From IMG/VR virus record IMGVR_UViG_3300017917_001123, positions 186,001-250,000 of that record: a stretch of DNA of 64,000 bases. The stretch is one strand, 5' to 3'. This document shows, piece by piece, positions 42,860-44,853 of the stretch. The position numbers and the translations under genes were made by a program. The notes under the pieces were generated by a model, which worked only from the letters and a program-made list of their open reading frames with translations, was not told the origin of the DNA and searched no databases. Numbering within the stretch: position 1 is the stretch's first letter; each line of letters starts with the position of its first letter.

Positions 42860-42930
42860 CTCTTGCTCCTTATTAATGTTTCTAGTCTCTAGTATAACAC
42901 CGGTTTTACCACTTGTCAACCAATACCCGT

Positions 42931-43269
42931 TCAATCTCCACGGGTATCTGTATTCAGCATGGGCTTCAACTTGCGGCGGAGTTCCACTTCCAAGTCGTGT
43001 CCTGCCTGCTTGCCACGTGCCGTGCCCAGAACGCGAACACCTATTTCAGTCTTGTCGTTGAGCTCACGCAGGGCCACGCAAAGGAGCCAATTCTTGCTTT
43101 CAGTCTTTGCGCGATAGAAATGCTTGGCTGCACGTGTCCGTGCGCTCTTAAGAGCTGTGGACTCTGTTTTGGCTGTGACACCAACATAAGTCATGCCGTT
43201 GACCGTAAGCTCATAGACTACATGAGTACGATCTGCACGCTTTTTACGGGGACGCTTTTCTAAGTTCAT
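42931..43269 (-). CDS. GIY-YIG-like protein (leaderless start)
   Basis: VVYEL..NGMTYVGVT...R...E...LN. ATG 6 nt after the -10. Confidence 0.6.
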   Translation of the reverse strand: MNLEKRPRKKRADRTHVVYELTVNGMTYVGVTAKTESTALKSARTRAAKHFYRAKTESKNWLLCVALRELNDKTEIGVRVLGTARGKQAGHDLEVELRRKLKPMLNTDTRGD

Positions 43270-43350
43270 GAGTGTAGTATAACACGGTTTTACCACTCTG
43301 TCAACCCCTAAAGAATACCCGAGTGGGCCGTAGGGTTTCAGAAATTCCGG

Positions 43351-43379
43351 TTGACATTCGGTAAAACCTGTGCTATACT
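43351..43379 (+). promoter_or_regulatory. Divergent plus-strand copy of the early promoter
   Basis: TTGACA-ttcGGTAAAacctgtgc-TATACT. Confidence 0.85.
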
Positions 43380-43513
43380 GTAGGCACAATGAGAGATAAG
43401 AAGAAAGCCATAAGGGCACGAGGGTTCGAACAGACTTGCTGGGGATGGACGGCGAGGGCCACCCCCCTATTTGGCTCGGTGATGAAAATATAGTAGGCTG
43501 CTCAAAATAGCCG

Positions 43514-43546
43514 CAAAAAAACCCTAGGCCAAATACCTCCTAGGGT
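43514..43546 (-). terminator. Minus-strand terminator
   Basis: ACCCTAGG-10nt-CCTAGGGT followed by a U run on the minus strand. Confidence 0.8.
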
Positions 43547-43781
43547 CTCCCTGCCCGGGTCTACCGCAACGTGACTCCGAACCGTTTGCGCTCAGTCTAC
43601 TCTAGGCCCAGGGCCTTCGACTCTAGCACAGTGACTTCTGTGGCAATTCACAGCACCTAAGGTCTGTACTGTTACCAGTATTCTTTCACGCTAGGCGTTT
43701 AACCGCATTATCAGTCTAGAGCAATTCCGTCACCTTAGTCATCGGCCGAATTGTTAACTGTTTCGTGTGCTGTTACGGCAC
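43514..43781 (-). ncRNA. Candidate structured non-coding RNA (~265 nt) downstream of tRNA
   Basis: No minus-strand ORF of note. Bounded by a TAAGTA box and a terminator. Multiple 6-7 bp complementary segments. Confidence 0.5.
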
Positions 43782-43802
43782 AAAATACTTAGCTCTGCCC
43801 GG

Positions 43803-43879
43803 TGGTGGGCCCAACAGGACTCGAACCTGTGACCAAGCGATTATGAGTCGCCTGCTCTAACCAACTGAGCTATAGGCCC
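43803..43879 (-). tRNA. tRNA-Ile2 (CAT, lysidine type)
   Basis: GGGCCTATAGCTCAGTTGGTTAGAGCAGGCGACTCATAATCGCTTGGTCACAGGTTCGAGTCCTGTTGGGCCCACCA. Cloverleaf with encoded CCA. Anticodon arm matches E. coli ileX as recalled. Confidence 0.9.
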
Positions 43880-43902
43880 CCGGGATTAATATTATACAGG
43901 AT

Positions 43903-44853
43903 TTACTTCCTTAATCCTAGTGCGGCCTGTAGCTTTTGGGCGGCATTCATAGTATTAGCAGTCTGCCCGTAGGGTGTATATGTTTGTCCCGCACCTGTGC
44001 CGTTGGGTTTTTCTGCTGATCCTAGGGCCTGTGCAGCGGGGTCACCAGTGGCCTGTGCAGCGGGGTTGGGTATGCCCGTGTCTACAAGCGATCTAACCTG
44101 TACACCTTCTGGATCCGCAATGTCTACGAAGGTCCAGTTGCCCAACAGCACAGGATTACCATCTACACGACGATTCCACTTACGCATATAGTACTTGTCT
44201 GCAGCGGGGTTCAGCCCGAGCTGGTCTACAAGGTTAGCAAACACAGAGTCGATCAGGATCATTGTCTCCGCACCTTCTAGAACTCGTAACCAATCGAATA
44301 CGGAATAACCTTCTAGCTCCCGCAACTCAATACATTGTACACCCGGTTCAACAATGGACAGATCAATGTCATAGCTCATATCACTAGCATGACCCTGATA
44401 TACCATATAGCGTTCTTGTGTGACTACACTATTATACAGTGATTTTTCTGCAGCGGGGTCCCGGTCTATACACTCGGCCAACTCCCACTTGTGACTAAAT
44501 GGTACTTCCGCTTGAGCATACTTGTATTGATCGAACTTAAACTGGGCAAAGTGACTCTTATTAGTACGCTCTGGATGACTACTCAAATACTGATACAACC
44601 ACAATTCCTCAGTTACTCCAATAGCGGTCAACTGCTTGTGCGGATTCTCATAAAAGAAAGCGCCATATTCATCTACGGGCACTGACATCCAACGAACCCA
44701 GGGAGCCGCTCGAACCATTTGTTGATAAAAGGGTTCACATACGGGCCAATATACTTCGTAGCCTCTACGTGTATATTCCTTAGCGATAGGTAGAGCAATG
44801 ATGATATCACCAAGTCCTCTACTCTGAATAAAACCAATTCTTTGTTGTGACAT
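43903..44853 (-). CDS. GT9-like glycosyltransferase
   Basis: SRGLGDIIIALP, DWLRVLEGAETMILIDSVFANL motifs. Confidence 0.7.
   Translation of the reverse strand: MSQQRIGFIQSRGLGDIIIALPIAKEYTRRGYEVYWPVCEPFYQQMVRAAPWVRWMSVPVDEYGAFFYENPHKQLTAIGVTEELWLYQYLSSHPERTNKSHFAQFKFDQYKYAQAEVPFSHKWELAECIDRDPAAEKSLYNSVVTQERYMVYQGHASDMSYDIDLSIVEPGVQCIELRELEGYSVFDWLRVLEGAETMILIDSVFANLVDQLGLNPAADKYYMRKWNRRVDGNPVLLGNWTFVDIADPEGVQVRSLVDTGIPNPAAQATGDPAAQALGSAEKPNGTGAGQTYTPYGQTANTMNAAQKLQAALGLRK

What the first reader, a model, noticed from the sequence alone, without database searches (positions are those of the whole stretch)
43514..43791. Candidate multi-pseudoknot ncRNA directly behind the tRNA
Seen on the minus strand: a late-type TAAGTA box (43786-91) with no ATG at the usual spacing, ~235 nt with only tiny ORFs, then a U-tailed terminator. 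Complementary pairs: CAAUUC/GAAUUG enclosing CUAAGGU, which matches distal ACCUUAG; CUCUAG/CUAGAG; ACAGCAC/GUGCUGU; UACUG-GUAA-CAGUA (GNRA loop); CUGUG/CACAG; AGGCCC/GGGCCU. CCGGGCAG is repeated at both ends. Established: phage tRNA loci often neighbour structured RNAs and ribozymes. I do not recognise the family.
Basis: partly seen in the sequence, partly recalled or inferred. Interest (0 to 1): 0.7.

Follow-up and report, generated by a model that had tools for sequence, protein, structure and literature searches.

The report
Structured RNA trailing a phage tRNA
The stretch behind the tRNA is a real, intricately folded non-coding RNA of about 265 to 290 bases, belonging to a previously uncatalogued family found behind the same tRNA in related uncultured freshwater phages; what it does is unknown.

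Summary
Its interpretation is only partly right.

**What holds**
- The region (window 43802-43513, minus strand) is a genuine structured RNA.
- A covariance model of it and three relatives finds seven more members in other phage contigs (E 5e-16 to 2e-4).
- On the 11-sequence alignment, 90.5% of pair cells are standard pairs, against 29-39% when partners are slid. 39 of 50 pairs show compensatory changes.
- Three reader helices are confirmed: CAAUUC/GAAUUG, ACAGCAC/GUGCUGU and the GNRA hairpin.

**What does not hold**
- CUAAGGU/ACCUUAG, CUCUAG/CUAGAG and the CCGGGCAG repeat are not conserved.
- The one supported pseudoknot is a different one: a kissing loop UGACU/AGUCA, which co-varies in every member.
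- TAAGTA is not a recurrent promoter box. A conserved TG(n)TATAAT promoter lies upstream of the tRNA, so the tRNA and the RNA are probably one transcript.
- Single-sequence folding is not better than shuffles (z = -1.54).

**Status**
- Rfam 15 has no match, including GOLLD, ROOL, ribozymes and riboswitches.
- No RNA-seq data hold this sequence, so transcription is inferred.
- The locus is hypervariable among close relatives.

The parts
43891..43898 (-). Extended -10-type promoter TGTATAAT, 11 nt upstream of the tRNA. It probably starts the tRNA + RNA transcript.
   Evidence: Sequence. TG(n)TAYAAT sits at the same place in 20 of 30 related loci, and most of the others have a TATAAT-like hexamer there. 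Function is inferred.
43803..43879 (-). tRNA with anticodon CAU and an encoded CCA. It is most like tRNA-Ile2 (lysidine type).
   Evidence: ARAGORN. Rfam tRNA 72.4 bits. 87% identical over its full length to E. coli genes annotated tRNA-Ile.
43779..43802 (-). 24-nt leader between the CCA and helix P1.
   Evidence: UAAGUAUUUUGUG is kept in the closest homologs, but the first 11 nt are not. In most other members this leader is within about 15 nt.
43513..43802 (-). Whole RNA element: leader, core P1-P8 and terminator.
   Evidence: Model R1 scores it 249 bits, though it was in the training set. Independent test: an nhmmer profile built from L153 + L164 only hits the 331-kb genome solely here, E = 2.1e-6.
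43775..43778 (-). P1 5' strand CCGU. It pairs with ACGG at 43582-43585.
   Evidence: Paired in 11 of 11 members. Three pairs are invariant, so covariation says nothing about them. The fourth is U-A in 7 members and U-G in 4.
43767..43773 (-). P2 5' strand ACAGCAC. It pairs with GUGCUGU at 43650-43656.
   Evidence: All 7 pairs show compensatory changes, and 94.7% of cells are paired. C-G becomes U-A in L148.
43712..43760 (-). P3 arm: P3a CAGUU/GACUG, P3b CAAUUC/GAAUUG, and an apical loop carrying UGACU (43737-43741).
   Evidence: P3a has 5 of 5 pairs with compensatory changes, P3b 5 of 6.
43737..43741 (-). K1 5' strand UGACU in the P3 loop. It kisses AGUCA (43632-43636) in the P6 loop.
   Evidence: Each member has a 4-7 bp Watson-Crick complement between these two loops, and the sequences differ between members: GACC/GGUC, CUGAC/GUCAG, UUGACGC/GCGUCAA, UUGGCU/AGCCAA, CUAACA/UGUUAG, CUGACAA/UUGUCAG, CUGACG/CGUCAG.
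43688..43698 (-). P4 hairpin ACGC-CUA-GCGU with a triloop.
   Evidence: 4 of 4 pairs show compensatory changes, and 97.7% of cells are paired.
43667..43680 (-). GNRA-capped hairpin UACUG-GUAA-CAGUA.
   Evidence: The loop is GUAA, GAGA or GUGA in all members. The stems co-vary, with 72% of cells paired after a one-column alignment shift.
43643..43646 (-). P5 5' strand UUGC. It pairs with GCAA at 43586-43589.
   Evidence: 4 of 4 pairs show compensatory changes, and 100% of cells are paired.
43627..43642 (-). P6 hairpin CACAG-AAGUCA-CUGUG. Its loop carries K1 3' AGUCA.
   Evidence: 90% of cells are paired, and 3 pairs show compensatory changes. C-G becomes G-U in L148.
43605..43615 (-). P7 hairpin GGCC-CUG-GGCC. 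This is the weakest, most variable arm.
   Evidence: 75% of cells are paired, and many members have gaps here.
43556..43579 (-). P8 hairpin CGG(A)GUC ... GACCCG, 3' of P1.
   Evidence: 6 of 7 pairs show compensatory changes, and 83% of cells are paired.
43513..43547 (-). Intrinsic terminator: a 9-bp stem, a 10-nt loop and U7.
   Evidence: Sequence and fold. It is kept in L148 and in the X2 contig. The pattern scanner missed it because the loop exceeds 8 nt.

Best explanation
Window 43802-43513 (minus strand) encodes a structured non-coding RNA of roughly 265-290 nt.

**How it is probably made**
- It is most likely transcribed together with the preceding tRNA(CAU) from a conserved extended -10 host-type promoter.
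- It ends at its own intrinsic terminator.
- It is separated from the tRNA by the host's normal tRNA 3'-end processing.
- These three steps are inferred, not shown.

**Fold supported by comparison with relatives**
- A closing helix P1 stacked on P2.
- A long P3 arm.
- A triloop hairpin P4 and a GNRA-capped hairpin.
- A second domain P5-P6-P7.
- A 3' hairpin P8.
- A kissing-loop contact between the P3 and P6 loops, which ties the two domains together.

**Family and function**
- It is a member of an RNA family absent from Rfam 15.
- The family occupies the same slot (GT9-like gene, tRNA, RNA, early promoter, GIY-YIG-like gene, gp88-like gene) in related uncultured freshwater phages.
- The primary sequence of the RNA diverges faster than the flanking proteins.
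- The most likely mode of action is a stable trans-acting RNA whose compact tertiary fold binds a protein, a ligand or copies of itself, as proposed for the phage tRNA-neighbouring RNAs GOLLD and ROOL. That step is speculation. The function is unknown.
For: **Homology**
- An nhmmer profile of L153 + L164 hits the own genome only at window 43778-43626, E = 2.1e-6.
- The direct homolog L148 is 82% identical, 244 of 298. Further variants appear in Logan contigs of runs X2 and X4, plus a minor variant in X1.
- Model R1 finds untrained members: L212 5e-16, L088 1.6e-14, L199 4e-14, L195 5e-11, L149 3e-11, L162 7e-6, L166 2e-4.

**Structure**
- On 4 sequences, 87.4% of cells are paired against 31-40% when slid, and 22 pairs have changes on both sides.
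- On 11 sequences, 90.5% are paired against 29-39% when slid. 39 of 50 pairs have compensatory changes. The covariation score is 0.60 against 0.11 or less, and 0 of 500 shuffles reach it.
- The kissing loop co-varies in every member.

**Strand**
- G-U cells outnumber A-C cells 26 to 13.

**Co-transcription**
- TG(n)TAYAAT lies upstream of the tRNA in 20 of 30 loci.
- P1 starts within about 15 nt of the CCA in most relatives (roughly 40 nt at most).

**Terminator, coding and synteny**
- Terminator.
- No ORF of 30 aa or more lies on this strand.
- No Rfam family matches at E up to 10.
- Synteny holds in 29 loci.
Against: - No transcript evidence exists. No RNA run holds the sequence.
- Single-sequence thermodynamics do not favour the comparative fold. 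MFE z is -1.54. The unconstrained MFE is -96.3 kcal/mol against -82.1 with the family pairs enforced, and only 17 of 59 pairs are shared.
- Three of the four P1 pairs are invariant and so untested by covariation. P7 is weak.
- The CM-made alignments lean towards the model's own structure.
- The RNA is absent from some close relatives: L004, L005 and L016 have only about 98 nt between the tRNA and the next promoter. It is therefore dispensable.
- Nothing found here bears on function.
Confidence: 0.8

Rival explanations
1. One reading: an independent late transcript that starts at a TAAGTA late promoter and folds into several pseudoknots (CUAAGGU/ACCUUAG, CUCUAG/CUAGAG, and the CCGGGCAG repeats).
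For: The motifs exist in this sequence. UAAGUAUUUUGUG is conserved in the three closest variants.
Against: - TAAGTA is under-represented and is not positioned like a promoter genome-wide.
- Other family members have no room for a promoter between the CCA and P1.
- CUAAGGU/ACCUUAG keeps 4 of 7 pairs in L148. CUCUAG/CUAGAG(177-182) keeps 3 of 6. CCGGG/CCCGG keeps 1 of 5.
- CUAAGGU overlaps the co-varying kiss strand UGACU.
Confidence: 0.07
2. A cis-acting sensor (riboswitch or attenuator) whose terminator controls read-through from the tRNA unit into the downstream early genes on the same strand.
For: It has an aptamer-like compact fold with a GNRA loop and a kissing loop, it ends in a terminator, and the downstream genes are co-oriented.
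Against: - The downstream gene has its own near-consensus TTGACA-17-TATACT promoter at 43304-43276.
- A convergent promoter at 43351-43379 lies in between, about 230 nt after the terminator.
- No conserved alternative (anti-terminator) pairing was found. The 5' CCGGGCAG copy is not conserved.
- No riboswitch family matched.
Confidence: 0.07
3. A self-cleaving or processing ribozyme that releases the tRNA 3' end or itself.
For: It lies immediately 3' of the CCA. It has a complex conserved tertiary architecture with invariant unpaired nucleotides (GAAA, AUAA, CCUA, GAA).
Against: No hit to any ribozyme family in Rfam 15 at E up to 10. Bacterial tRNA 3' ends need no ribozyme.
Confidence: 0.06
4. 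A fast-evolving spacer, or recombination scar of a homing-nuclease hot spot, that merely carries the tRNA's terminator. On this view the apparent structure has no function.
For: - The locus is hypervariable. Contigs of relatives break here.
- The RNA is missing in L004 and L016.
- A minor variant in the same pond sample has an 83-nt replacement.
- A stand-alone GIY-YIG-like gene is next door.
Against: A neutral spacer would not keep 90% of 50 pairs through 121 double-sided changes while the primary sequence diverges beyond blastn recognition. The kissing loop also co-varies.
Confidence: 0.05

Closest known systems
[quoted passage not shown]
   Same: It is a phage or prophage structured RNA of unknown function, often next to tRNA genes. 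One studied example lies downstream of a Met-tRNA, and it occurs in lake metagenomes (10.1101/2024.12.08.627333).
   Different: GOLLD is about 800 nt and forms 14-mer cages. This RNA is about 270 nt. Rfam 15 found nothing here beyond the tRNA (and its mirror match on the opposite strand) and a few weak chance-level hits, at E up to 10. Oligomerisation was not tested.
ROOL RNA
   Same: It is a phage-encoded ornate RNA with pseudoknots, often near tRNA islands, with no known protein partner.
   Different: ROOL averages 581 nt with six multistem junctions. There is no Rfam match here.
Phage T4 species 1 and species 2 stable RNAs (rnaC, rnaD) in the tRNA cluster. From memory, not checked here.
   Same: They are small stable RNAs of unknown function, made from the same precursor transcripts as phage tRNAs. 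A GIY-YIG Seg-type homing nuclease gene (segB) lies in the same region.
   Different: They are shorter (about 120-140 nt) and come from a different phage group.
Sister RNAs at the same slot: groups D/C (model R2) and B (alignment A2)
   Same: - They share the synteny: GT9-like gene, tRNA(CAU), RNA, early promoter, GIY-YIG-like gene.
- They share the order of elements: P1 closing helix, P2, P3 arm whose loop kisses the P6 loop, NUA-triloop hairpin, GNRA hairpin, P5, 3' hairpin, terminator.
   Different: They are not detectable with model R1, even with filters off. R2 does not detect this RNA. Common descent is therefore inferred from position and architecture only.

Membership tests
tRNA(CAU)-trailing phage RNA family defined here (model R1) | Sequence/structure profile match obtained without using the window | tested here: met
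   An nhmmer profile of L153 + L164 gives a single genome hit at window 43778-43626, E = 2.1e-6. R1 itself was trained on the window, so its 249 bits are not independent.
tRNA(CAU)-trailing phage RNA family defined here (model R1) | Helices P1-P6 and P8 can form at the homologous columns | tested here: met
   All of them pair in the window row. Across the family, 90.5% of cells are paired.
tRNA(CAU)-trailing phage RNA family defined here (model R1) | P3-loop/P6-loop kissing complementarity | tested here: met
   UGACU/AGUCA, 5 Watson-Crick bp. 117 of 2000 loop shuffles do as well in this single sequence. The contact is present in all 11 members with different sequences.
tRNA(CAU)-trailing phage RNA family defined here (model R1) | Position directly 3' of tRNA(CAU), between the GT9-like gene and the GIY-YIG-like gene | tested here: met
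tRNA(CAU)-trailing phage RNA family defined here (model R1) | The RNA is actually made and is stable | not testable with these tools
   No RNA run holds the sequence.
GOLLD / ROOL (Rfam 15) | Covariance-model match | tested here: not met
   No hit at E up to 10 in the window region or in relatives.
GOLLD / ROOL (Rfam 15) | Size of about 580-800 nt and homo-oligomeric cage formation | tested here: not met
   The length here is about 270 nt. Oligomerisation is not testable with these tools.
Self-cleaving ribozymes and riboswitches in Rfam 15, including cobalamin (the D-group loop GAGACCUGCC resembles a B12 box) | Covariance-model match | tested here: not met
   L102, a D-group locus, also gave nothing but the tRNA.
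tmRNA / tRNA-like RNA | ARAGORN or Rfam detection in 43513-43802 | tested here: not met
   Only the tRNA at 43803-43879 is found. The genome's tmRNA lies elsewhere.
Intrinsic (rho-independent) terminator | G+C-rich hairpin followed by a U run | tested here: met
   A 9-bp stem with 5 G-C pairs plus U7 at 43547-43515. It is conserved in L148 and X2.

The most novel reading that the evidence does not exclude
The family is a new class of phage 'ornate' RNA with an active biochemical role. Three possibilities fit the data:
- It self-assembles, as ROOL and GOLLD do, using its exposed loops.
- It acts as a decoy or inhibitor of a host defence or RNA-processing factor.
- It acts as a ribozyme on the adjoining tRNA.

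On this reading, its rapid sequence turnover with a fixed architecture would reflect an arms race.
Probability: 0.15. Interest if true: 0.85.

Novelty: new variant of a known kind. Interest (0 to 1): 0.62.

Why it matters
Phage-encoded large structured RNAs next to tRNA genes, such as GOLLD and ROOL, are among the least understood RNA classes. This adds a smaller and more tractable family of about 200-nt core, with a well-supported secondary structure and a co-varying kissing loop. It comes from abundant uncultured freshwater phages, including a 331-kb jumbo phage.

The conserved architecture combined with fast sequence turnover, and the hypervariable locus next to a GIY-YIG-like nuclease gene, make it a candidate for a phage-host conflict function. 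The RNA is small enough for in vitro structural and biochemical work.

Tried and rejected
- **Rfam 15.** Gathering and E up to 10 scans of the window, its relatives and the sister groups returned only the tRNA, its mirror match on the opposite strand (Plastid-ycf2) and a few weak chance-level hits.
- **blastn to 50,697 phage records.** Only the tRNA matches. tblastn of the upstream protein found no cultured relative.
- **blastn of the RNA against relatives' loci.** No hits. Homologs had to be reached through flanking proteins and Logan contigs.
- **Pattern GATAATGYGGYTAARCG in viral contigs.** 25 chance hits.
- **Linking groups B, C, D and H to this RNA.** nhmmer, R1 with filters off, and R2 all failed.
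- **A resemblance to the cobalamin B12 box and GAGAAUCC.** Rejected by covariance-model search.
- **A tiny ORF, AUG ACU AAG GUG ACG GAA UUG CUC UAG.** Its changes in relatives are non-synonymous and it has no Shine-Dalgarno sequence. Rejected by inspection.
- **RNA-seq evidence.** None available.

Full report
**Context**

The window is bases 186001-250000 of a 331,570-bp IMG/VR phage record estimated 93% complete. The finding lies on the minus strand directly 3' of a tRNA with anticodon CAU at 43879-43803. That tRNA is 87% identical over its full length to E. coli genes annotated tRNA-Ile, so it is probably the lysidine-type tRNA-Ile2. I number the RNA so that position p equals window 43803 - p. 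Position 1 follows the CCA.

**Checking the observation**

Two parts of the description fail.

- TAAGTA is not a recurrent box. It is under-represented in the genome (98 + 74 copies against about 152 expected per strand), and its contexts are ordinary coding sequence.
- The fold is not better than chance by energy. MFE is -88.4 kcal/mol, z = -1.54, and 15 of 200 shuffles fold as well.

Covariation settles the matter the other way.

**Finding relatives**

blastn finds nothing but the tRNA in 50,697 phage records. The upstream 316-aa protein led to syntenic loci in viral and metagenome contigs. These fall into three kinds.

- Some relatives (L004, L005, L016) have only about 98 nt between the tRNA and the next promoter, so the RNA is absent.
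- Many others carry a 230-300-nt element that starts 0-12 nt after the CCA, often with UAAACC, and ends in a terminator. These are not blastn-similar to ours.
- Exact-protein look-ups gave a true homolog, L148, which is 82% identical (244 of 298).

Logan contigs of runs X2 and X4, and a minor variant in the source sample X1, carry further variants. Many contigs of relatives end right at this locus. That fits strain-level hypervariability.

| Pairing | Result in L148 |
|---|---|
| ACAGCAC/GUGCUGU | kept, with C-G changed to U-A |
| CACAG(161-165)/CUGUG(172-176) | kept, with C-G changed to G-U |
| CAAUUC/GAAUUG | unchanged |
| GNRA hairpin | unchanged |
| CUAAGGU/ACCUUAG | 4 of 7 pairs kept |
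| CUCUAG/CUAGAG(177-182) | 3 of 6 pairs kept |
| CCGGG/CCCGG | 1 of 5 pairs kept |
| CGCAA/UUGCG | 0 of 5 pairs kept |

The 5' CCGGGCAG copy is simply not conserved.

**Placing the RNA in a family**

Two more divergent RNAs, L153 and L164, share long modules with ours. A profile of those two alone hits the 331-kb genome only at window 43778-43626, E = 2.1e-6.

On the 4-sequence alignment A3, I wrote a structure with P1-P8 plus a kissing loop. It gave these figures.

- 87.4% of cells are paired, against 31-40% with partners slid.
- 22 pairs have changes on both sides, against 2-6 when slid.

A covariance model from A3 (R1) then found RNAs it had not seen: L212 (5e-16), L088 (1.6e-14), L199 and L206 (4e-14), L195 (5e-11), L149 (3e-11), L162 (7e-6), and L166 and L167 (2e-4).

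On the 11-sequence alignment A7:

- 90.5% of 482 cells are standard pairs, against 29-39% when slid.
- 39 of 50 pairs carry compensatory changes.
- The covariation score is 0.60, against 0.11 or less when slid.
- No shuffle of 500 reaches any of the measures.

This alignment was fitted to the model, which favours the structure. The margin over the slid controls is large, and seven rows were not in the training set.

**The fold in this window**

| Element | RNA positions |
|---|---|
| P1 | 25-28 / 218-221 |
| P2 | 30-36 / 147-153 |
| P3a | 43-47 / 87-91 |
| P3b | 50-55 / 76-81 |
| P4 (triloop CUA) | 105-115 |
| GNRA hairpin | 123-136 |
| P5 | 157-160 / 214-217 |
| P6 | 161-176 |
| P7 | 188-198 |
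| P8 | 224-247 |
| Terminator | 256-283, plus U7 |

The one supported pseudoknot-type contact is between the P3 and P6 loops. Here it is UGACU(62-66)/AGUCA(167-171). In other members it is GACC/GGUC, CUGAC/GUCAG, UUGACGC/GCGUCAA, UUGGCU/AGCCAA, CUAACA/UGUUAG, CUGACAA/UUGUCAG or CUGACG/CGUCAG.

Its CUAAGGU overlaps the kiss strand.

Single-sequence folding recovers only 17 of the 59 comparative pairs, and it prefers a structure 14 kcal/mol lower. This is a caveat for this particular sequence.

**Transcription (inferred)**

- A TG(n)TAYAAT element ends about 8-12 nt upstream of the tRNA in 20 of 30 loci. Here it is TGTATAAT at 43898-43891. Most of the remaining loci have a TATAAT-like hexamer there.
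- In most relatives P1 begins within about 15 nt of the CCA (roughly 40 nt at most), which leaves no room for a separate promoter.
- G-U cells outnumber A-C cells 26 to 13, which favours the tRNA strand.
- No public RNA run holds the sequence, so nothing is shown at the RNA level.

**Relation to known families**

Apart from the tRNA and its opposite-strand mirror match (Plastid-ycf2, 25-55 bits, below its 65.7-bit gathering score), Rfam 15 gives only weak chance-level hits (E about 1-10) in the window, in family members or in the sister groups. GOLLD, ROOL, ribozymes and riboswitches are therefore excluded as families.

In kind, it resembles GOLLD and ROOL. Those are phage RNAs of unknown function near tRNA genes, and one GOLLD lies downstream of a Met-tRNA. 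From memory, it also resembles the T4 species 1 and 2 RNAs.

**Sister groups at the same slot**

- Group B has 29 compensatory pairs by RNAalifold.
- Groups D and C are joined by model R2, E 1e-16 to 1e-20.
- Both show the same order of elements, including a strongly co-varying 7-8 bp P3/P6-type kiss.
- Neither R1 nor R2 crosses between the groups. A single superfamily is an inference from synteny and architecture.

**Function**

Nothing here bears on function directly. The compact multi-helix fold, with a GNRA loop, a kissing loop and invariant junction nucleotides, argues for a trans-acting RNA with a tertiary structure rather than a base-pairing sRNA or a mere terminator.

The downstream genes have their own consensus promoter, which argues against a cis-regulator. 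The RNA is dispensable in some relatives and evolves fast next to a GIY-YIG-like nuclease gene. That would suit either a conflict-related role or a recombination hot spot.

Noticed in passing
window 43276-43304 (-), 43351-43379 (+), 42891-42919 (-): These are near-consensus sigma-70 promoters TTGACA-17-TATACT (11 of 12 matches, with TG), each with a shared GGTAAAACC spacer. Two are arranged back to back just downstream of the RNA. The same promoter recurs before each small early gene in relatives.
   Followed up: partly
window about 43386-43510 (+): A short unit is driven by the + strand promoter and converges on the RNA's terminator. Its core GGGG(A/G)UGGACG(G/U)(C/G)GAGG is conserved in L148, L164, L149, L162 and L018. 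No reading frame is conserved from the first ATG, and no consensus fold was found. It could be a small RNA, a 15-30-aa peptide (MDGEGHPP...), or an antisense transcript into the RNA.
   Followed up: partly
window 42931-43269 (-): The 112-aa protein directly downstream has no Pfam or PHROG hit. Its language-model and structure neighbours are stand-alone GIY-YIG nuclease domains. More than 2,100 homologs exist in metagenomes. A nuclease next to a hypervariable locus recalls the T4 seg genes (from memory).
   Followed up: partly
window 43903-44853 (-): The 316-aa upstream protein has no Pfam hit. Its nearest Atlas clusters have structural neighbours in glycosyltransferase family 9. This is a lead only.
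   Followed up: partly
window 43803-43879 (-): ARAGORN calls the tRNA 'tRNA-Met'. It is 87% identical to E. coli tRNA-Ile(CAU) genes, so it probably reads AUA after lysidine modification.
   Followed up: partly
G000:C1:320035-320428 and 329801-329875 (outside the window): ARAGORN finds a permuted tmRNA gene (tag ANDEVYALAA) and a tRNA with anticodon CUA, which would suppress amber codons, in the same phage genome. The latter could point to TAG recoding.
   Followed up: no
window 43521-43613, run X1: The source pond sample holds a minor variant, at depth 7.9 against 140. In it, 91 nt of the RNA's 3' part are replaced by 83 other letters, and the rest carries many substitutions. This is micro-diversity at the locus within one sample.
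   Followed up: partly
L017:1505-1582 and beyond: In this relative the RNA is followed by a second, inverted copy of the tRNA and an inverted fragment of the upstream gene. It is either an inverted duplication or an assembly artefact.
   Followed up: no
L004:5058-5150 (also L005, L016): Relatives that lack the RNA instead carry two direct copies of TAATAAGAACTATTCGCAT between the tRNA and the early promoter.
   Followed up: no
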